From contig NW_021828035.1 in the NCBI RefSeq assembly GCF_006345805.1, positions 1 through 8,904 on the forward strand: a stretch of DNA of 8,904 nucleotides. Reading direction: 5' to 3'. This stretch comes from Octopus sinensis (lineage: Eukaryota). The notes under the pieces are model-generated. The model was not told the DNA's origin. It made no database searches and saw nothing but the letters and a program-made list of their open reading frames with translations. The position numbers were made by a program, and so were the translations under genes. Positions 124 to 8,904 of the stretch are shown here, piece by piece. The first letter of the stretch is position 1; each line of letters starts with the position of its first letter.

Positions 124-885
124 TGGTACTTAATTTTTCGACCCCGAAAGGATTGAAAGGCAAAGTCGACCTCGGCGGAATTTGAACTCAGAACGTAACA
201 GGGGCAGACGAAATACCTATTTCTTTGTGGTGCACCTGAGCACTTGTGGTGCACCTGAGCACTGTATACAATAATTTCATTATTATATTATTTTACTACC
301 CACAAGGGGCTAAACACAGAGGAGACAAACAAGGACAGACAAAGGGATTAAGTCGATTATATCGACCCCAGTGCGTAACTGGTACTTATTTAATCGACCC
401 CGAAAGGATGAAAGGCCAAGTCGACCTCGGCGGAATTTGAACTCAGAACGTAACGACAGACGAAATACCTATTTCTTTATTACCCACAAGGAGCTAAACA
501 TAGAGGGGACAAACAAGGACAGACATAGGTATTAAGTCGATTATATCGACCCCAGTTCGTAACTGGTACTTAATTTATCGACCCCGAAAGGATGAAAGGC
601 AAAGTCGACCTCGGCGGAATTTGAACTCAGAACGTAATGGCAGACGAAATACCTATTTCTTTACTACCCACAAGGGGCTAAACACAGGGGACAAACAAGG
701 ACAGACATAGGTATTAAGTCGATTACATCGACCCCAGTGCGTAACTGGTACTTAATTTATCGACCCCGAAAGGATGAAAGGCAAAGTCGACCTCGGCGGA
801 ATTTGAACTCAGAACGTAACAGCAGCAGACGAAATACGGCTACGCATTTGGCCCGGTGTGCTAACGACTCTGCCAGCTCGCCGCC
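124..885 (-). mobile_element. tRNA-derived SINE family A, tandem array: 48-bp head (838-885) + units 653-837, 469-652, 217-468 and partial 124-216
   Basis: Minus strand starts GGCGGCGAGCTGGCAGAGTCG with an A-box-like TGGCAGAGTCG (865-875) and a B-box-like GAGTTCAAATTCC (798-810). The ~184-bp unit repeats with B boxes at 177-189, 432-444, 616-628 and 798-810. Junctions at 216/217, 468/469 and 652/653 all read AAATAG|GTATTT on the sense strand. Assignment to octopus SINEs is from recall. Confidence 0.9.
227..294 (+). mobile_element. 68-bp insertion in SINE unit 3; probable 5'-truncated non-LTR 3' end with (ATT)n-like tail
   Basis: Absent from the other units, which read TTCTTT-ACTACC/ATTACC. 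Carries an exact 19-bp tandem duplication TGTGGTGCACCTGAGCACT (226-244, 245-263) and ends in CATTATTATATTATT. Confidence 0.55.
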
Positions 886-930
886 TTTACCAATACTTAT
901 ACCGAAGTTACGCCGAAAAAGAAAAAAAAA

Positions 931-1320: not shown

Positions 1321-1620
1321 ATGTGTAGGAGTTTTTGAAATGTGTGTGGCGTAATGGTCTAATTGAACTTTCTGAATATTTTTAATTTTTATCCATTTCA
1401 CTTCCTGTAACTCTTAACCAAAATTTCATTCAACAAGATGGTAACTTCTGTCGAGATCCTTGGGCCAAACTTGAAGAAGAAAAAAAAAAGCTCTTTTGAT
1501 TAACCCTCCTCCAATGAAAGAAAACCCGACAGATTGAAACGACACACCCGTATATTCGATGTGTATTGTTTTAGACGTAGGTACCCCCTAGGAAAATGGG
1601 TTTGGGTGGTTGCTACTGGA

Positions 1621-1946
1621 CGAGGTCGACTTTGCCTTTCATCCTTTCGGGGTCGATAAATTAAGTACCAGTTACGCACTGGGGTCGATGTAATCGACTT
1701 AATACCTATGTCTGTCCTTGTTTGTCCCCCTCTGTTTAGCCCCTTGTGGGTAATAAAGAAATAGGTATTTGTCGTCTGCCGTTACGTTCGAGTTCAAATT
1801 CCGCCGAGGTCGACTTTGCTTTCATCCTTTCGGTTTCGATAATTAAGTACCAGTTACGCACTGGGGTCGATGGAATCGACTTAATACCTATGTCTGTCCT
1901 TGTTTGTCCCATCTATGTTTAGCCCCTTGTGGGTAGTAAAGAAATA
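1621..1946 (+). mobile_element. SINE family A, 5'-truncated 1.8-unit multimer flanked by a target-site duplication
   Basis: Partial unit 1621-1764 + full unit 1765-1946, with the same AAATAG|GTATTT junction as the first array. Direct repeat GCTACTGGA at 1612-1620 and 1947-1955 (8-9 bp; the G may belong to the element end). Confidence 0.9.
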
Positions 1947-2653
1947 GCTACTGGAATATTCTTTATCGTAAGTAGCCAAAGTGTGGTCGATCGTGTTTAA
2001 GCAGGAAGTAAACAAATAATTATATTTAGCTTGGCCTGTCGGGCCGAGAAGCATTAATAATATATCGAGAACACACTCTATGCTACATAGACGTGAAATC
2101 GTCATTACATTATATTTTTGCCGTCTTGCAGAAAACCGTAGCTAAATCTTCCTCAATCACATCCTATTGTCTTTTTTTTTTTTTTTGGGAAAATATATAC
2201 ATACATATATACACACATGTATTATATGAGCAACCCTCTTCGGGAAGCGAGCCGCATGAGGCGTGATTCATCGTCAAATAGGCAAAAATACTAAAAAAAA
2301 AAAAAAATTAATTTTTCAGAGGGGTGAAAATTTTTCATTCAGGAATTCTCGCGGGGCCACACGTGGGCCGCAGCTCATGACAGTTGTATTTAGATATAGA
2401 CGATACTATTCCAAACTGGAATAGTTTTGAAAAGCTTCAGCGTAGAAGTCTGGGACCGATCATTGCTAATAATGGAAAGAGACTAGCACAGTTCTTACAA
2501 TAAGGAATAATAATAAAAATCAACAGGTTATATAATCAGAGACGATAAAAAAATTCGGTGGCAACTTGGTTGTAAAAACCTGATAAGCCCAGGAGAGATA
2601 AGTGACATATAGGTCAAGTAAATAAAACTTGCGTTAAAGCTAAATAGTAAAAT

Positions 2654-2731: not shown

Positions 2732-3334
2732 TTATATTATATACATATATATAAAATGTATGTATGTATATGTATATATGTATGTATATATGTATGTATG
2801 TACATGTATGTATATATGTATGTATGTACATATATGTATGTATGTATATGTATGTATATATGTATGTATATGTATATGTATATATATGTATATGTATGTA
2901 TGTATGTATATATGTATGTATGTATATATGTATGTATGTATGTATATATGTATGTATATATATATGTATGTATATATATATGTATGTATGTATTATATAT
3001 AGGTATGTATATATATATGTATGTATATATTATGTGTATATATATGTATGTATTATATATATATATGTATGTATATATATATATGTATGTTTATATGTAT
3101 GTATATATTTTTATTTATGTATGGATTATTATTTATATGTATGTATATATATATGTATGTATGTATATATGTTGTATGTATATATATTGTATGTATGTAT
3201 ATATGTATGTATGTATATATATATATGTATGTATGTATATAGTATGTATGTAGATAATATATATGATGTATATATATATATATATATGTATGTTATATTA
3301 TATATATATGTATATATATATATATGTATGTATG

Positions 3335-3365
<31 letters not shown>

Positions 3366-3390
3366 GTATGTATGTATATATATATGTATG

Positions 3391-3445
<55 letters not shown>

Positions 3446-3560
3446 GTATATGTATGTATGTATGTATATGTATGTATGTATGTATATATATGTATGTATG
3501 TATATATATGTATGTATGTATATATATGTATGTATGTATATATATGTATGTATATGTATG

Positions 3561-3599
<39 letters not shown>

Positions 3600-3688
3600 G
3601 TATATGTATGTATGTATATATATGTATGTATGTATATGTATGTATGTATATATATGTATGTATGTATGTATATGTATGTATGTATATG

Positions 3689-3773
<85 letters not shown>

Positions 3774-3858
3774 GTATGTATATGTATGTATGTATGTATG
3801 TATGTATATCTATGTATGTATATGTATGTATGCATATATATATATGTATGTATACATA
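2732..3858. repeat. ~1.1-kb compound (TATG)n/(TA)n microsatellite
   Basis: Seen directly. All ORFs in 2661-3957 are Y/M/C/V/I or H/T/Y/I homopolymer-like translations of this repeat. Confidence 0.97.
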
Positions 3859-4412: not shown

Positions 4413-5378
4413 ATGTGCCAAGGACCTCGCATGACCTTGGAGAGACGGTACGAGGTCTCTCGTGGCGTGGGAAGCTGTCGGAGGCTGCAATAGCCAGAAA
4501 ATTGGTTGTAGCCAGGCGCACAATTCAGTGCTTATTTAAGAAATACGAGGAAACCAGATCAGCAGCTGACAAAAAAGGGTAGGGGATGGAAGGCTGACGA
4601 ACCCAGCAGAGAGGACCAGATGCTGATCCAAAAGTCACTGTACAACCGAAGGGCAACGAGCCGGCAACTGGCGCGAGGAGATGCAAAGATGACAGGAAGC
4701 AGTTGTCTACAACCACCGTCAAGACCAGATTACTGGAAGCCGCTCCTTACAGCCCAAAACCGGAAGAGGCGGCTGCTCTGGGCCCGTGCCCAAAAGACAT
4801 GGACCGTGCAGCAGTGGCAGACAGTGATACTTCACTGACGAGTCGCGATTCAGTCTCGTCAGTGACAAGCCTGTCATGTGCGACGCTGCAGGGTGAGCGC
4901 TTCAACAAAGACGCATTGCTTCCACCATGAAGCATGGTAGGGGTGGTCTGATGGTGTGTGGGGGCGTTCAGCTACAGTGGTGTTGGGCGGCTCTATGCCG
5001 TCGAAGGCAACATCAAGCAGCAAAGTGCGTTGAGAGGTACGGGATACCTCTTGGTGGCGAGGGAGTACGTGCTCCAGCAGGACAACGCGCCTTCCCACAC
5101 AGCCAAGCTCACAAACGGTTTCTTCAAGGACCATGGGGTGACGGTCATGGACTGGCCTGGCCAGTCACCTGACCTGAACCCTATTGAGAACCTCTGGAGT
5201 CGATTGGGTAGGGATTTGAATTGAATGTGCAGCAATACAGGAACCGACACGAGCTGTTTGGGGCACTTCTTGCTGCATGAGGGGCCATCCCTGCACAGTA
5301 CCTGCAGGCACTCATAGACAGCATGCCGACCGCGTAGCAGCTGTCATTGCTGCCAAAGGAGGAGCAACAAGATATTGA
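4413..5378 (+). pseudogene. Tc1-type DD34E transposase pseudogene (multiple frameshifts, stops and deletions)
   Basis: Stitched frames give: HTH LSEAAIARKLVVARRTIQCLFKKYEET, GRGWK (degenerate GRGRK), TTVKTRLLEA, KPLLTAQNRKRRLLWAR, FTDESRF (D at 4837), WGAFSYSGVG-like segment, QQDNAPSH (D at 5081), WPGQSPDLNPIENLW (E at 5186; 34 residues between D and E), and C-terminus IDSMP..VAAVIAAKGGATRY* (TGA 5376-5378). Confidence 0.95.
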
Positions 5379-5652
5379 CTAAATTTCACGATTAATAACA
5401 ATTATGTGGTGTGCTGGGATATGTATTAATTAATTTTTGATTAAAAACGAGTTCGTTTCTGATAATAAGTTAATTAAATTAAGAAAATGTAAGAAAATGT
5501 AGAAATTTGAGAAGTGCTAATTAATTTCCGACGCAAGTGTATATATACATGTATATATATATATATATATGAATGCAGTGTGACAGGTGTTTGTAATCCA
5601 TTTAAGAAACACACAAAACCCGTTCAATTCACTTAAACATTTAAGTTTAATT

Positions 5653-5698
5653 TGTCAAAATATTTTCGTCGCTAAAATCCGCGACCTTCTCACTGACA
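5653..5698 (-). ncRNA. Degraded hammerhead-like motif (mirror copy)
   Basis: TGTCA-GTGAGAA-G-GTCGC/GCGAC-GAA-AATATT-T-TGACA. The core has G3/A8, which cannot pair, so it is probably inactive. Confidence 0.4.
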
Positions 5699-5717
5699 CA
5701 AAATCCGTGCGCATCTC

Positions 5718-5765
5718 TTGTCAGTGAACAGGTCGAGGATTTAGCGACCGAAAATATTTTGACAA
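5718..5765 (+). ncRNA. Type I minimal hammerhead ribozyme candidate with swapped G3-C8 core
   Basis: Stem I TTGTCA(5718-5723)/TGACAA(5760-5765); core GUGAACA (5724-5730); stem II GGTCG/CGACC (5731-5735/5745-5749); G12A13A14 at 5750-5752; palindromic stem III AAUAUU (5753-5758); H17=U5759. Predicted cut 5759/5760. Confidence 0.65.
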
Positions 5766-5904
5766 ATTAAACTTAAATGTTTAAGTGAATCGAACGGGTT
5801 TTGTGTGTTTCTTAAATGGATTACAAACACCTTCCACGCTGCAATTGTTTTCGTTTCAGCACACGATCTCAGATCAAATCACTTGCTATGCAAGTACATC
5901 TCCC

Positions 5905-6228: not shown

Positions 6229-6790
6229 GGATCTTTTCGGTTTGAACGGCAGTTTTCTCTAGCGGTGTCATATGAAATTCTCACCCATAATTATGACCCT
6301 AGAATCGATCTATTGCATTTCAATCGGTTTTAGGGTTAGGGGTGGGGGGAAGGGTATCTTTTTTTCTTCAGAAATGTAAATAAACCCAATCTGTTTCTTA
6401 AACGAGGGACATATTCATACGGCACAGAATGTTTTTTTTTTACCTCAATAGACGTCATTGATTTGTTGAAATTGCAGAAATTGAAGAAAAAAAACAAAAA
6501 TATCTTACAAACTATAGAATTTTCTCAATAAAGCCAAGAGAAAAAGATGTTTTATAAACACATTCTACCAGTATATGAAGTTTAAAAGTGTTTAGTTACC
6601 TAGAAATTATGTTAAAAATTGCCGTTCAAACCGAAAAGATCCCAAATATATTACAAACTATAGAATTTTCTCAATGAAGCCAAGAGAAAAAGATGTTTTA
6701 TAAACACATTCTACCAGTATACGAAGTTTAAAATTTTTTTAGTTACCTAGAAATTATGTTAAAAACTGCCGTTCAAACCGAAAAGATCCC
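6229..6790. mobile_element. MITE-like non-autonomous DNA transposon with one left and two right TIRs
   Basis: 28-bp TIR GGATCTTTTCGGTTTGAACGGCAGTTTT (6229-6256) is a perfect inverse of 6762-6789 and 27/28 of 6615-6642. The 3' 146/147 bp is tandemly duplicated (6498-6643, 6644-6790). No coding capacity; superfamily not determined. Confidence 0.85.
6330..6354 (+). other. G-quadruplex-forming motif beginning with two TTAGGG units
   Basis: TTAGGGTTAGGGGTGGGGGGAAGGG: four G tracts with 3, 1 and 2-nt loops. Confidence 0.6.
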
Positions 6791-7010
6791 AGCTGAGTGA
6801 AATAGTAACTTAATCATTGTAAATGCTTTTGCTCCGTGGATTTTAAGTGTTAAATCATTTAGAATGTCCTTTATTTCGAATTTCATGAATTCATCTGACG
6901 AAAACGGTTTCTTTACAATGGTGTGATATTTTCATTAATCAATTAAAGAAGCCGTTAGAAATGGCTGCAATGCATTGACATCTGTACCTCTACTGTTACT
7001 CATTTATAAG

Positions 7011-7089: not shown

Positions 7090-7288
7090 CTCTTTACTCT
7101 TTTACTTGTTTCAGTCATTTGACTGTGGCTATGCTGGAGCACCGCCTTTAGTTGAGCAAATAGACCCCGGGACTTATTCTTTGTAAGCCCAGTACTTATT
7201 CTATCGGTCTCTTTTGCCGAACCGCTAAGTAATGGGGACGTAAACACACCACCATCGGTTGTCAAGCAACGCAAGGGGGAAAAACACA

Positions 7289-7321
<33 letters not shown>

Positions 7322-7525
7322 CATATATATAACGGGAAGCTTTATGAAAATAAACAAAAGACGAAGGCAGGTGGAAACATACATACATATATACGACAGG
7401 CTTCTTTCAGTTTCCGTCTACCAAATCTACCCACAAGGCATTGCCCAAGATGCCACGCAGTGGGACTGAACCCGCAACCATGTGGTTGGTTAGGAAGCTA
7501 CTTACCACACAGCCACTCCTGCGCC
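7090..7525 (-). mobile_element. tRNA-derived SINE family B, full length, with a 31-bp core deletion and a ~47-bp internal insertion
   Basis: Head GGCGCAGGAGTGGCTGTGTGG (A-box-like), B box GGTTCAGTCCC, CTTGGGCAA core start (resembles the CORE-SINE motif; octopus OR-type SINEs are known CORE-SINEs, assignment is inference), internal CA/TA repeat, tail GAAACAAGTAAAAGAGTAAAGAG. Confidence 0.92.
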
Positions 7526-7615
7526 TATATATATATATAAGCAGACAGATAGATATACATGGATATAGATAGATAGAGATAGATAGATAGATAAATAGAT
7601 GGATAGATATACATA
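7526..7615. repeat. (TA)n/(GATA)n spacer between the head-to-head SINEs
   Basis: Seen directly. Confidence 0.85.
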
Positions 7616-8024
7616 GGCACAGGGGTGGCTGTGTGGTAAGTAGCTTGCTAACCAACCACATGGTTGCGGGTTCAGTCCCACTGCGTGGCATCTTGGGCAA
7701 GTGTCTTCTGCTATAGCCCCGGGCCGACCAATGCTTTGTGAGTGGATTTGGTAGACGGAAACTGAAAGAAGCCTGTCGTATATATGTATATAAATATTTG
7801 TATGTGTGTGTGTTTGTGTGTCTGTGTTTGTTCCCCTAGCATTGCTTGACAACCGATGCTGGTGTGTTTACGTCCCCGTCACTTAGCGGTTCAGCAAAAA
7901 GAGACCGATAGAATAAGTACTGGGCTTACAAAAAGAATAAGTCCTGGGGTCGAGTTGCCCAACTAAAGTCGGTGCTCCAGCATGGCCGCAGTCAAATGAC
8001 TGAAACAAGTAAAAGAGTAAAGAG
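7616..8024 (+). mobile_element. tRNA-derived SINE family B, full length
   Basis: Inverted homologue of 7090-7525 along its length; A-box-like TGGCTGTGTGG, B box GGTTCAGTCCC, same (A/G)-rich tail. Confidence 0.93.
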
Positions 8025-8025
8025 T

Positions 8026-8489
8026 ATTAAAAAGTTTAGAAGCTCTAAAAAGATGTTTGTATTTTTTTTCTAAGACTAATAATTTATGTTAAGTTATTAA
8101 TGGTTTATATTAGTTGTTAAGGCACCATTTCCGCTAGATATTAAAAAGCTAATGTATTGTGGTACAATGATATTAATGATGAGACTAAATTCCTTGCTTA
8201 AATGCAGTAATATTGACAATAGATTAGAATACTTAGCTAAGAGGAAAGATTTATAATTTTAAAAGACCATAAACCTAATTTTCATGATAAACCTAATTTA
8301 CGTTTGTTAAACCCAGTGAGATCTGAAATTGAACAAGTAGCTAAAAAAATACTAACAAACATTAGTAATTAATTTAGAGAAATTGCTGGTCTTCAACAAT
8401 GAAATAACAGTTTTACTGCAACAGCCAGGTTTAAGAATAAGAATAAGGCTAAATTCACCCAGTTTCACAAATTTTTATTCCCCTACATA
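8026..8489 (+). pseudogene. Decayed Penelope-like element reverse transcriptase fragment
   Basis: Across frameshifts and stops: IKKFRSSKKMFVF..KTNNL, RY*KAN..YNDINDETKFLA, NIDNRLEYLAKR, FIILKDHKPNFHDKPNLRLLNPVRSEIEQVAKKILTNI, LQQ*NNS..FKNKNKAKFTQF..FY. This is colinear with the PLE RT pattern FADKTxNLY..AFITLKDHK.NF.N.P.CRLINP.KSE.G..NQWKN..WF..FDI..FYPSI as I recall it. KDHK at 8262-8273. Confidence 0.85.
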
Positions 8490-8904
8490 GTTGTAGGGGT
8501 GGCTGTGTGGTAAGTAGCTTGGACATTGTTGTAGAGCTGAAAAAGGGGTAATTTCTACTCTTCTCCTCTGGAAGCCATCTACTCGCAATGCCAGAGGGCG
8601 CACACTCTCCTACCCTGATGTAATCTCCAGGGATACAGGCATCCAGCAACAGGACCTCCGTAATGCCGTGATGGACCGTGAAGTCTGGCGTAGCATGGTA
8701 AATTCCATTGTCTCGACCACGGTCGAACAATGATGATGATGAGCTTGTTTACAAACACCATGGTTCCAGGTTCAGTCCCACTGTGTGGCACCTTGGGCGA
8801 GTGTCTTCTACTATAGCCTCGGGCTGACCAAAGCCTTGTGAGTGGATTTGGTAGACGGAAACTGAAAGAAGCCCGTTGTATATATGTATATATGTATGTA
8901 TATA
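8490..8904 (+). mobile_element. SINE family B (runs off the window), interrupted between A and B boxes by a LINE fragment
   Basis: Head 8490-8521, resumes at 8742 through GGTTCAGTCCC, CACCTTGGGCG and the core into the TA-rich repeat. Confidence 0.9.
8522..8741 (+). mobile_element. 5'-truncated RTE-type LINE 3' end (220 bp)
   Basis: TSD AGCTTG (8516-8521, 8742-8747); (TGA)n tail. Uninterrupted frame 8521-8733, GHCCRAEKGVISTLLLWKPSTRNARGRTLSYPDVISRDTGIQQQDLRNAVMDREVWRSMVNSIVSTTVEQ*, matches the GHC.R..LLW.P..RGR..DR..WR C-terminus typical of RTE-clade proteins. Confidence 0.88.

What the first reader, a model, noticed from the sequence alone, without database searches (positions are those of the whole stretch)
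1612..1955. A SINE multimer inserted as one event (single TSD around 1.8 units)
One 8-9 bp TSD (GCTACTGGA) encloses a 5'-truncated unit plus a full unit, and the element ends exactly at the junction nucleotide (..GAAATAG). The multimer therefore existed at the RNA/cDNA stage rather than arising by later unequal crossover. The same AG|GT junction occurs four times in two independent loci. The unit starts with GT and ends with AG, like an intron. Possible routes: a multimeric master gene, repeated RT template jumps, or rolling-circle copying of a ~184-nt circular RNA as in retrozymes, although no hammerhead core is visible in this unit.
Basis: partly seen in the sequence, partly recalled or inferred. 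Interest (0 to 1): 0.75.

Follow-up and report, generated by a model that had tools for sequence, protein, structure and literature searches.

The report
Truncated multi-unit SINE, inserted once
This is one retrotransposon insertion that carried more than one tandem body unit of an octopus-type SINE, in a family where about a third of all units are joined head-to-tail at one exact base; such SINE arrays are already described, but this one offers a testable way for a scattered repeat to become tandem DNA.

Summary
GCTACTGGA occurs only at 1612 and 1947 and brackets a unit cut at its position 43 plus a full 184-nt unit. The tail-to-unit joint occurs four times in the window.

The element is a SINE with a Pol III-type head and a 184-nt body, moved by LINE-type target-primed insertion: 32 of 40 copies have 8-22 nt direct repeats.

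A near-identical second copy of the locus (C8135) has the same repeat around 2.8 units. The insert was therefore multi-unit, and 1.8 is secondary.

Genome-wide there are 87,590 intact tails; 66% are followed by GGT and 31% by GGTATTTCG, the unit start. The spacer was exactly 1 nt in 100 of 100 listed joints.

The SINE ends in GAAATA. The G belongs to the target, so "GT...AG like an intron" is an effect of phase.

In most other arrays sampled the units differ in age. A young head and unit sits upstream of older units that have no near-identical twin anywhere (best 93-97%). This favours growth in place by insertion at the family's own internal GGTAT motif.

No ribozyme was found, and a circular RNA is unlikely.

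The scan has noted this family before on other DNA of this genome. I class it as a new variant of a known kind.

The parts
1612..1620 (+). 5' copy of the target-site duplication, GCTACTGGA
   Evidence: this 9-mer occurs only here and at 1947. The same repeat is present in the second copy of the locus, L002.
1621..1764 (+). 5'-truncated unit (unit positions 43-185, type AA)
   Evidence: 98% to the reference unit; 100% identical over 109 nt to unit 1 of the neighbouring inverted array (687-795). It differs from its L002 counterpart at a cluster of sites, which suggests gene conversion.
1765..1946 (+). Full 184-nt unit ending ...AAAGAAATA. The joint with the previous unit lies at 1764|1765.
   Evidence: Its 3' two thirds match unit Uc of L002. 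Its first ~77 nt match neither Ub nor Uc well.
1947..1955 (+). 3' copy of the target-site duplication, GCTACTGGA.
838..888 (-). Head of the second, full-length array of the same family. It carries the A-box-like motif TGGCAGAGTCG.
   Evidence: The true 5' end is about AAGGCGGCGAG, because the preceding GTAAA is often part of the direct repeat in other copies.
653..837 (-). Unit 1 of the full-length array (the reference unit; type AA). It contains the B-box-like motif GAGTTCAAATTCC.
469..652 (-). Unit 2 (type AA)
217..468 (-). Unit 3 (type BB), with an insertion of roughly 65 nt in its tail (about 226-290) that includes a 19-bp tandem duplication
124..216 (-). Partial unit 4 (unit positions 1-92), broken off at its 3' side
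   Evidence: The L002 copy has the same structure.

Best explanation
Positions 1612-1955 hold one LINE-type (target-primed) insertion of a 5'-truncated, multi-unit cDNA of a SINE.

The family has a ~51-nt head with an A-box-like motif, followed by a 184-nt body that carries the B-box-like motif. The body is often repeated in tandem behind a single head.

The template of this insertion was most likely a linear read-through transcript of a genomic array. The unit contains no run of four T, so Pol III should read through all units. Reverse transcription stopped inside a unit at position 43.

The original insert had at least 2.8 units, as kept in the second copy of the locus. The 1.8 units in this contig arose later, by in-register loss or gene conversion, or by collapse in assembly.

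The arrays that supply such transcripts mostly grow in place. The family's insertion machinery strongly prefers targets that begin GGT(AT), and the same motif lies at the head/body border of the SINE (...GCG|GTATTTCG). New copies land there in older copies, joining their end GAAATA to GGTATTTCG. The 5' side is then resolved through homology with the resident head, leaving a seamless head-unit-unit.

Shown: the direct repeats, the truncation, the exact joint, the GGT preference, the age difference between units, and the absence of twins. Inferred: the linear multi-unit transcript, the resolution by homology, and the cause of the GGT preference.
For: TPRT signature:
- 32 of 40 elements that end in the canonical tail have direct repeats of 8-22 nt, median 12.
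- 5'-truncated copies carrying such repeats also exist: L046, L041 and L004.

This locus:
- The 9-mer is exact and unique.
- The same repeat surrounds 2.8 units at C8135.
- The middle unit there is type BB and is only 88-89% identical to its neighbours, so it is not a recent chimera of them. 2.8 is therefore the older state.
- Its two full units show equal CpG decay, 4 of 11 sites each.

Genome-wide exact counts:
- Intact tails: 87,590.
- Tail followed by GGT: 57,642.
- Tail followed by GGTAT: 48,103.
- Tail followed by GGTATTTCG: 27,302.
- The 22-mer joint: 31,246, against 0 for the reversed control.
- The spacer between ...ATA and GTATTTCG was exactly 1 nt in 100 of 100 listed cases: G 86, A 9, C 4, T 1.

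Target motif:
- In the local sample 16 of 40 tails are followed by GGT. In 11 of those 16 the direct repeat starts exactly at that GGT, so GGT is target sequence.
- Most heads end ...GCG before GTATTTCG, which makes GGTAT at the head/body border.

Growth in place:
- In 7 seeded arrays the unit next to the head is 98.4-99.5% identical to other copies, while the next unit is only 88-92% identical to its array mate.
- The best non-self match anywhere in the genome for three such downstream units is 95%, 97% and 93%.
- L022 shows the same GGTAY site used twice.
- A second joint type, GAAATA|AGAAAC at head position ~22, matches the direct-repeat starts AGAAAC/AGAAT of other copies.
Against: - The multi-unit transcript is therefore inferred.
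- The self-targeting route predicts a hidden duplication of the first bases of the resident unit and an old head. Private variants at the start of the old unit are not duplicated in L005 and L017. Heads of such arrays mostly look young: 0-2 private changes, and about 6 in L017. Extra assumptions are therefore needed, namely long annealing and repair towards the new strand.
- The classical, non-seamless product (unit start, up to 22 nt, then a head start) is rare: 182 cases.
- The seeded loci were chosen for a young first unit, and the unbiased arrays are few.
- The twin test scored only 40 candidates per query.
- The partner LINE was not found in 300 kb.
- The window's 1.8-unit state may be an assembly error.
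Confidence: 0.6

Rival explanations
1. Serial template jumping. During a single target-primed event the reverse transcriptase copies one SINE RNA up to the head/body border, then jumps to the 3' end of another SINE RNA, and so on. Every array would then be made at the cDNA stage and inserted at once.
For: - Single direct repeats surround whole arrays: L008 (18 nt), L010 (15), L035 (17), L004 (14) and this locus.
- The joint is exact.
- The joint lies at the edge of the apical loop of the predicted head hairpin.
- LINE reverse transcriptases are known to switch templates; this rests on my own knowledge and on titles listed.
Against: - Units made in one event should be equally old. In 7 arrays the head-proximal unit is about 1% from other copies, while the next unit is 3-7% from its nearest relative anywhere.
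- An old-looking unit copied from an old source should leave that source as a twin. None was found in 3 of 3 tests.
- The cDNA end made at the border (...GAAATACC) resembles the tail rather than complementing it. A jump would therefore need acceptor RNAs that carry GGUAU after the tail.
Confidence: 0.15
2. A few multi-unit master genes plus ordinary DNA-level events only. An ancient duplication would have made a dimeric master. All joints would descend from it by retrotransposition of multimers, and copy number would change by unequal crossover.
For: - This locus is a retrotransposed multimer.
- Some arrays have units that are each other's nearest kin: L008, L022 units 3 and 4, and L002 units Ua and Uc.
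- Copy number differs between the two copies of this locus.
- Long regular arrays exist, for example C1:12139147-12140248 and C29:6698001 onward.
- Unequal recombination is the published explanation for SINE arrays (PMC11481361, PMC10702118).
Against: - The downstream units of young arrays are unrelated to one another, each with 5-12 private changes, and lack twins. Many independent joinings are therefore needed.
- Unequal crossover cannot place a young unit next to an old one.
- It does not explain why the joint motif equals the start of the direct repeats.
Confidence: 0.15
3. Rolling-circle reverse transcription of a circular unit RNA, of one or two units, as proposed for retrozymes.
For: - The joint is exact.
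- The tail GAAAUA can pair with UAUUUC at the unit start (sequence).
- The C8135 copy reads X-B-X: units Ua and Uc share rare variants around a different middle unit. A two-unit circle would give that order.
Against: - No hammerhead or other self-cleaving ribozyme family matches at E<=1 over the window or at E<=10 over head+2 units.
- Full-length arrays start with a head that is not part of the repeat unit.
- Units in arrays are mostly of different type and age.
- The GT...AG look is a matter of phase.
- The fold of head+unit is no more stable than shuffles, z = -1.0.
Confidence: 0.03
4. Not one event: the 9-mer is a chance match or an assembly artefact, and the array is a fragment of a larger array.
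For: - The window is a short unplaced contig.
- Its full unit carries several single-base indels.
- The number of units disagrees with the second copy.
Against: - The 9-mer is exact, unique in the window and sits at both borders.
- It is reproduced in an independently assembled copy with identical flanks.
- The family as a whole shows such repeats.
Confidence: 0.03

Closest known systems
Tandem-like SINE arrays of bivalves, structure TSD1-(SINE)n-TSD1, in Scapharca broughtonii (PMC11481361)
   Same: The first unit has the complete tRNA-related head, the following units lack part of the head, and one target-site duplication surrounds the whole array. The host is also a mollusc.
   Different: - There, about 3% of the SINEs are in arrays. 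Here, at least 31% of intact tails are internal joints.
- There, inner units are truncated at the tail as well. Here, the full tail is kept and the joint is exact to the base.
- The authors suggest unequal recombination. Here, the units differ in age and the joint motif equals the preferred target.
SINE-derived satellites of squamate reptiles (PMC10702118)
   Same: Tandem repeats are built from part of a SINE, with a longer terminal unit that reaches the SINE terminus. Origins are independent and recurrent.
   Different: - Those arrays reach up to 1000 units, are often subtelomeric and are homogenised. Here, arrays are mostly 2-8 units and dispersed.
- Here at least one 5'-truncated array has its own direct repeat, which shows that arrays retrotranspose.
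Multimers of rodent and bat SINEs (Dip, B2, B1, Ves) and dimeric SINEs such as Alu (PMC8466645, PMC10702118)
   Same: A large share of copies lies in head-to-tail multimers (Dip 49%, B2 40%). The same two routes are debated: insertion into an older copy, or retrotransposition of a multimeric template.
   Different: Those multimers are made of complete SINEs joined at the A-rich tail, which is the target of L1. Here the entry point is internal, at the head/body border, so the arrays share one head.
Link between TSD start and 3' end in RTE-related SINEs and LINEs (PMC6007223)
   Same: The first bases of the target-site duplication correlate with the 3'-terminal sequence of the element, which is explained by pairing of primer and template.
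   Different: - Here the preferred start (GGT, with a decaying match to GGTATTTCG) depends on subfamily. All 9 terminal tails of the youngest type are followed by GGT, against 0 of 8 for type AB.
- That same preferred start is also present inside the element.
Non-LTR retrozymes of animals (abstract of bioRxiv 10.64898/2026.07.22.740005)
   Same: Short non-coding units in tandem, with rolling-circle copying proposed.
   Different: Retrozymes are defined by a hammerhead ribozyme in each unit, and none is found here. This family has a Pol III head and LINE-type direct repeats.

Membership tests
SINE (Pol III-transcribed, LINE-mobilised short retroposon) | Internal Pol III promoter (A and B boxes) derived from a small RNA gene | tested here: inconclusive
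   A-box-like TGGCAGAGTCG in the head and B-box-like GAGTTCAAATTCC in each unit are read from the sequence. ARAGORN finds no tRNA, and Rfam gives no tRNA match at E<=10 over head+2 units.
SINE (Pol III-transcribed, LINE-mobilised short retroposon) | Short, non-coding and in high copy number | tested here: met
   A monomer is about 235 nt. There are 87,590 exact tails in the genome, and about one copy per 18 kb in 200 kb of arbitrary sequence.
SINE (Pol III-transcribed, LINE-mobilised short retroposon) | Target-site duplications of variable length, and 5' truncation | tested here: met
   32 of 40 elements have 8-22 nt repeats. Truncated copies with repeats: this locus, L046, L041 and L004.
SINE (Pol III-transcribed, LINE-mobilised short retroposon) | 3' tail shared with a partner LINE | tested here: inconclusive
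   No tail-only match outside SINE units in 300 kb. The genome could not be searched further.
Tandem-like SINE array / SINE-derived satellite | Head only on the first unit, with following units starting at one fixed internal position | tested here: met
   The joint is exact genome-wide.
Tandem-like SINE array / SINE-derived satellite | One target-site duplication around the whole array | tested here: met
   This locus and L002 (9 nt), L008 (18), L010 (15), L035 (17), L004 (14), L013 (19 with 1 mismatch) and L020 (18 with 1 mismatch).
Retrozyme (circular-RNA, hammerhead-bearing retroelement) | A self-cleaving hammerhead ribozyme in every unit | tested here: not met
   Rfam cmscan shows no ribozyme family at E<=1 over the window or at E<=10 over head+2 units.
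Retrozyme (circular-RNA, hammerhead-bearing retroelement) | A circular RNA of unit length | not testable with these tools
Target-specific non-LTR retroelement (target chosen by pairing with the RNA 3' end) | A non-random start of the target-site duplication that matches sequence at or after the element's 3' end | tested here: met
   66% of tails are followed by GGT, and 55% by GGTAT. The direct repeat starts at that GGT in 11 of 16 local cases. Whether the cause is the endonuclease or RNA pairing was not tested.

The most novel reading that the evidence does not exclude
The family may be a self-homing SINE.

Its RNA would carry a few bases of the source's 3' flank (GGUAU). This would do two things. 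It would pass the target preference on to daughter copies, and it would steer new copies into the identical motif at the head/body border of older copies.

Each hit would be resolved through homology with the resident head and would add one head-less unit. A dispersed SINE would thus turn itself into tandem DNA, with about 3x10^4 exact joints, without unequal crossover. The arrays would then be transcribed and retrotransposed as wholes, as at this locus.

A rolling-circle intermediate for the X-B-X order at C8135 remains formally possible, at about 3%.
Probability: 0.4. Interest if true: 0.7.

Novelty: new variant of a known kind. Interest (0 to 1): 0.5.

Why it matters
How dispersed repeats give rise to tandem and satellite DNA is an old question, usually answered by appeal to unequal crossover.

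This family has tens of thousands of base-exact joints. The joint motif equals the element's preferred target. The units of one array differ in age. Together these make a retrotransposition-driven route testable with data that exist or are easy to get: several Octopus genomes, long reads and Pol III RNA ends.

It also matters for annotation. Octopus SINE counts, age landscapes and claims of activity depend on whether a 184-bp unit is counted as an insertion event.

For this particular locus the message is narrower. Arrays, once made, are themselves mobile, and they change again after insertion.

Tried and rejected
- **Reads.** No letters of 2185-2230 were sent to any search tool afterwards, and the work stayed beside them. 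There is therefore no RNA evidence, no empty-site test in related species and no check of 1.8 against 2.8 units.
- **More genome DNA.** Only coordinates and pattern counts were used after that.
- **Partner LINE.** No tail-only match was found in 300 kb.
- **Solitary heads** as a sign of priming at the internal site were uninformative.
- **Hidden duplication** at the start of the young unit was not seen.
- **Single dimeric master AA-BB** is rejected, because the second units are unrelated.
- **Pol III stop at the TTT of GTATTT** as the source of monomers is rejected. The unit has six TTT and no TTTT (sequence).
- **Microhomology template switch at AGAAA or GGTAT** is rejected. The joints keep both full copies of the motif.
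- **RNA editing** as the cause of the old-looking units is rejected. Read by eye from the alignment, many of the changes are C-to-T or G-to-A.
- **CpG retention** turned out to be a weak clock here. Old units keep 9-10 of 11 sites.
- **Literature.** No paper in the held library describes multimers of octopus SINEs.

Full report
**What is there**

The window is contig C4506 of a 2.72-Gb genome with 13,516 contigs. Its size and its SINE content fit an octopus; I did not verify the species.

Positions 1612-1955 read: GCTACTGGA, then 144 nt matching positions 43-185 of a 184/185-nt repeat unit, then a full unit, then GCTACTGGA again. The 9-mer occurs nowhere else in the window.

About 800 bp away, on the other strand, lies a full-length member of the same family. 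It consists of:
- a ~51-nt head (838-888);
- three units (837-653, 652-469, 468-217), the last with a ~65-nt insertion in its tail;
- a broken fourth unit (216-124).

The tail-to-unit joint occurs four times in the window.

**What kind of element it is**

The head carries an A-box-like motif, and each unit carries a B-box-like motif (sequence). ARAGORN and Rfam do not call a tRNA.

I worked with 30 loci seeded with head+unit and 20 arbitrary 10-kb stretches. Forty elements in them end in the canonical tail. Of these, 32 are bracketed by direct repeats of 8-22 nt, median 12. Several copies are 5'-truncated.

This is the signature of LINE-driven target-primed reverse transcription. The partner LINE was not found in the 300 kb.

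A related, older family (U') shares the head and the first ~121 nt of the unit but has a different tail.

**The true border**

In 11 of the 16 local copies whose tail is followed by GGT, the direct repeat starts exactly at that GGT. The SINE therefore ends ...AAAGAAATA.

The repeat unit is better written GGTATTTCG...GAAATA. The intron-like GT...AG is an effect of phase.

**Genome-wide numbers (exact pattern counts)**

| Pattern | Count |
|---|---|
| Intact tail, TTGTGGGTARTAAAGAAATA | 87,590 |
| Tail followed by GGT | 57,642 (66%) |
| Tail followed by GGTAT | 48,103 (55%) |
| Tail followed by GGTATTTCG, the unit start | 27,302 (31%) |
| The 22-mer joint | 31,246 (reversed control 0) |
| Tail, 0-4 free bases, then GTATTTCG | 29,170 |

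In the last search all 100 listed cases have exactly one base in the gap: G 86, A 9, C 4, T 1.

About a third of elements are multimers. This holds in the unbiased sample too, where 4 of 12 are. Arrays of eight or more units exist, for example C1:12139147-12140248.

**This locus**

Contig C8135 (L002) is a near-identical second copy of the first 2.2 kb of the window. Substitutions amount to about 2%, and two of the three full units of the full-length array are 100% identical, the third 98.9%.

It has the same flanks and the same 9-mer, but 2.8 units: 43-185, a full unit of type BB, and a full unit of type AA.
- The middle unit is only 88-89% identical to its neighbours and carries a 14-nt deletion. 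It is therefore not a fresh product of unequal exchange between them, and 2.8 is the older state.
- Its two full units have lost the same number of CpG sites, 4 of 11 each, as expected if they arrived together.
- The first and last units at C8135 share rare variants (CCCATCTATG), giving an X-B-X order.
- In the window the corresponding stretch is replaced by younger-looking sequence with several single-base indels. The truncated unit is 100% identical over 109 nt to unit 1 of the neighbouring inverted array.

From this I infer in-register loss plus gene conversion, or a collapsed assembly of this short contig. I cannot tell which.

Either way, a copy truncated inside a unit has no head and no internal entry site. 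It cannot have grown in place, so a multi-unit cDNA was inserted once. The claim that later exchange played no part is not.

**How the arrays arise**

The units of one array are usually not each other's nearest kin. In seven seeded arrays (L004, L005, L012, L017, L020, L022, L024):
- the head-proximal unit belongs to the youngest types and is 98.4-99.5% identical to other copies;
- the next unit is of another type (mostly BB) and carries 5-12 private changes;
- the downstream units of different arrays are unrelated to one another.

I searched the whole genome with three such downstream units. The best non-self matches were 95%, 97% and 93%.
- A single dimeric master is excluded for these arrays.
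- Copying from an old source in one event would leave a twin, so this is not supported either.
- These units therefore aged where they are, and a young head+unit was added in front of them. The young/old border lies within about 17 nt of the joint.

The site of addition is the motif that the family prefers as a target. Most heads end ...GCG before GTATTTCG, which makes GGTAT.

The preference depends on subfamily:
- all nine terminal tails of the youngest type are followed by GGT;
- none of eight type-AB tails is; those are followed by TAT, TAA or AGA.

This points to a determinant in the RNA, for example a few read-through bases of the source's flank, rather than to the endonuclease alone. That is an inference.

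A second, rarer joint (GAAATA|AGAAAC at head position ~22; L016, L035, L049) likewise equals the direct-repeat starts AGAAAC/AGAAT of other copies. In L022 the same GGTAY site was used twice.

**Weak points of the self-targeting route**

- The expected classical product (head, a few bases of unit, then a new head) is rare: 182 exact cases, some amplified into 64-76-bp satellites.
- Heads of young/old arrays mostly look young.
- No hidden duplication is seen at the start of the young unit.
- The 5' side must therefore be resolved by long annealing with the resident head, with repair towards the new strand. This is plausible but untested.

Homogeneous arrays (L008, L022 units 3 and 4) and this locus show that whole arrays also retrotranspose. 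Not every joint is an independent event.

**Circle and ribozyme**

Rfam finds no ribozyme at E<=1 in the window or at E<=10 over head+2 units. Arrays start with a head that is not part of the unit. The units are heterogeneous. The fold of head+unit is not unusually stable, z = -1.0, although the joint lies at the edge of the apical loop of the head hairpin. I put the rolling-circle reading at about 3%.

**Comparison with what is known**

- Bivalve SINE arrays of the form TSD1-(SINE)n-TSD1, with one full head (PMC11481361), describe the same architecture.
- So do the squamate SINE-derived satellites (PMC10702118). Both are attributed mainly to unequal recombination.
- Multimers of complete rodent SINEs joined at A-tails are common, and whether they arise by insertion or from dimeric templates is left open (PMC8466645).
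- A link between TSD starts and 3' ends is known for RTE-related SINEs (PMC6007223).
- I found no description of octopus SINE multimers in the held library.

What differs here:
- the scale;
- the base-exact internal joint;
- the identity of joint and target motif;
- the age structure of the arrays;
- a 5'-truncated array with its own direct repeat.

I class it as a new variant of a known kind.

**Earlier notes of this scan**

The scan has already noted this family on other DNA of the same genome. I reached the GGTAT reading before that look-up, so those notes agree with it rather than support it.

**Limits**

- No RNA data and no cross-species test were possible.
- The seeded loci are biased towards a young first unit.
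- The twin test scored 40 candidates per query.

Noticed in passing
G000:C1:195358956-195359246; C7:15322785-15323080; C4:103048078-103048271: Short satellites of period 64-76 bp, built from the SINE head plus the first 13-24 nt of the unit. They look like amplified products of a classical self-insertion at the GGTAT site.
   Followed up: no
L022 (G000:C13:34196451-34199684), minus strand, oriented 1460-2400: Two different dimers sit in the same target, with three copies of GGTAYAAGACATTGA (target-site triplication). The GGTA site was used twice.
   Followed up: partly
L021:740-1320: Tandem duplication of a SINE together with about 40 nt of its 5' flank. This is a DNA-level duplication, distinct from the exact joints.
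   Followed up: no
window 217-290: An insertion of about 65 nt inside the tail of the third unit of the full-length array, including a 19-bp tandem duplication (225-263). The same structure is present in the C8135 copy.
   Followed up: no
window 2733-3858: About 1.1 kb of (TATG/TATA)n microsatellite, which produces many sub-threshold miRNA-model hits in Rfam.
   Followed up: no
window 4620-5224: Decayed Tc1/mariner-type transposase pieces: DDE_3 at E 1e-10, and HTH_Tnp_Tc3_2 at E 1e-4, below its cut-off.
   Followed up: partly
window 5574-5843: A foldback with 134-nt arms, 87% complementary. Another note of the scan (s1-116990) reads 5718-5765 as a hammerhead. Rfam gives no hammerhead match at E<=10 over 5560-5860.
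   Followed up: partly
window 7090-8024 and 8484-8903: Nested inverted and direct copies of another SINE-like family (starting GGGGTGGCTGTGTGGTAAGTAGCTTG). They give long hairpins and sub-threshold plant-miRNA model hits.
   Followed up: no
window 6488-6791: A tandem duplication of about 146 bp, with copies 92% alike.
   Followed up: no
Its message says the filter also trips by chance. They were left out of all later searches.
   Followed up: no
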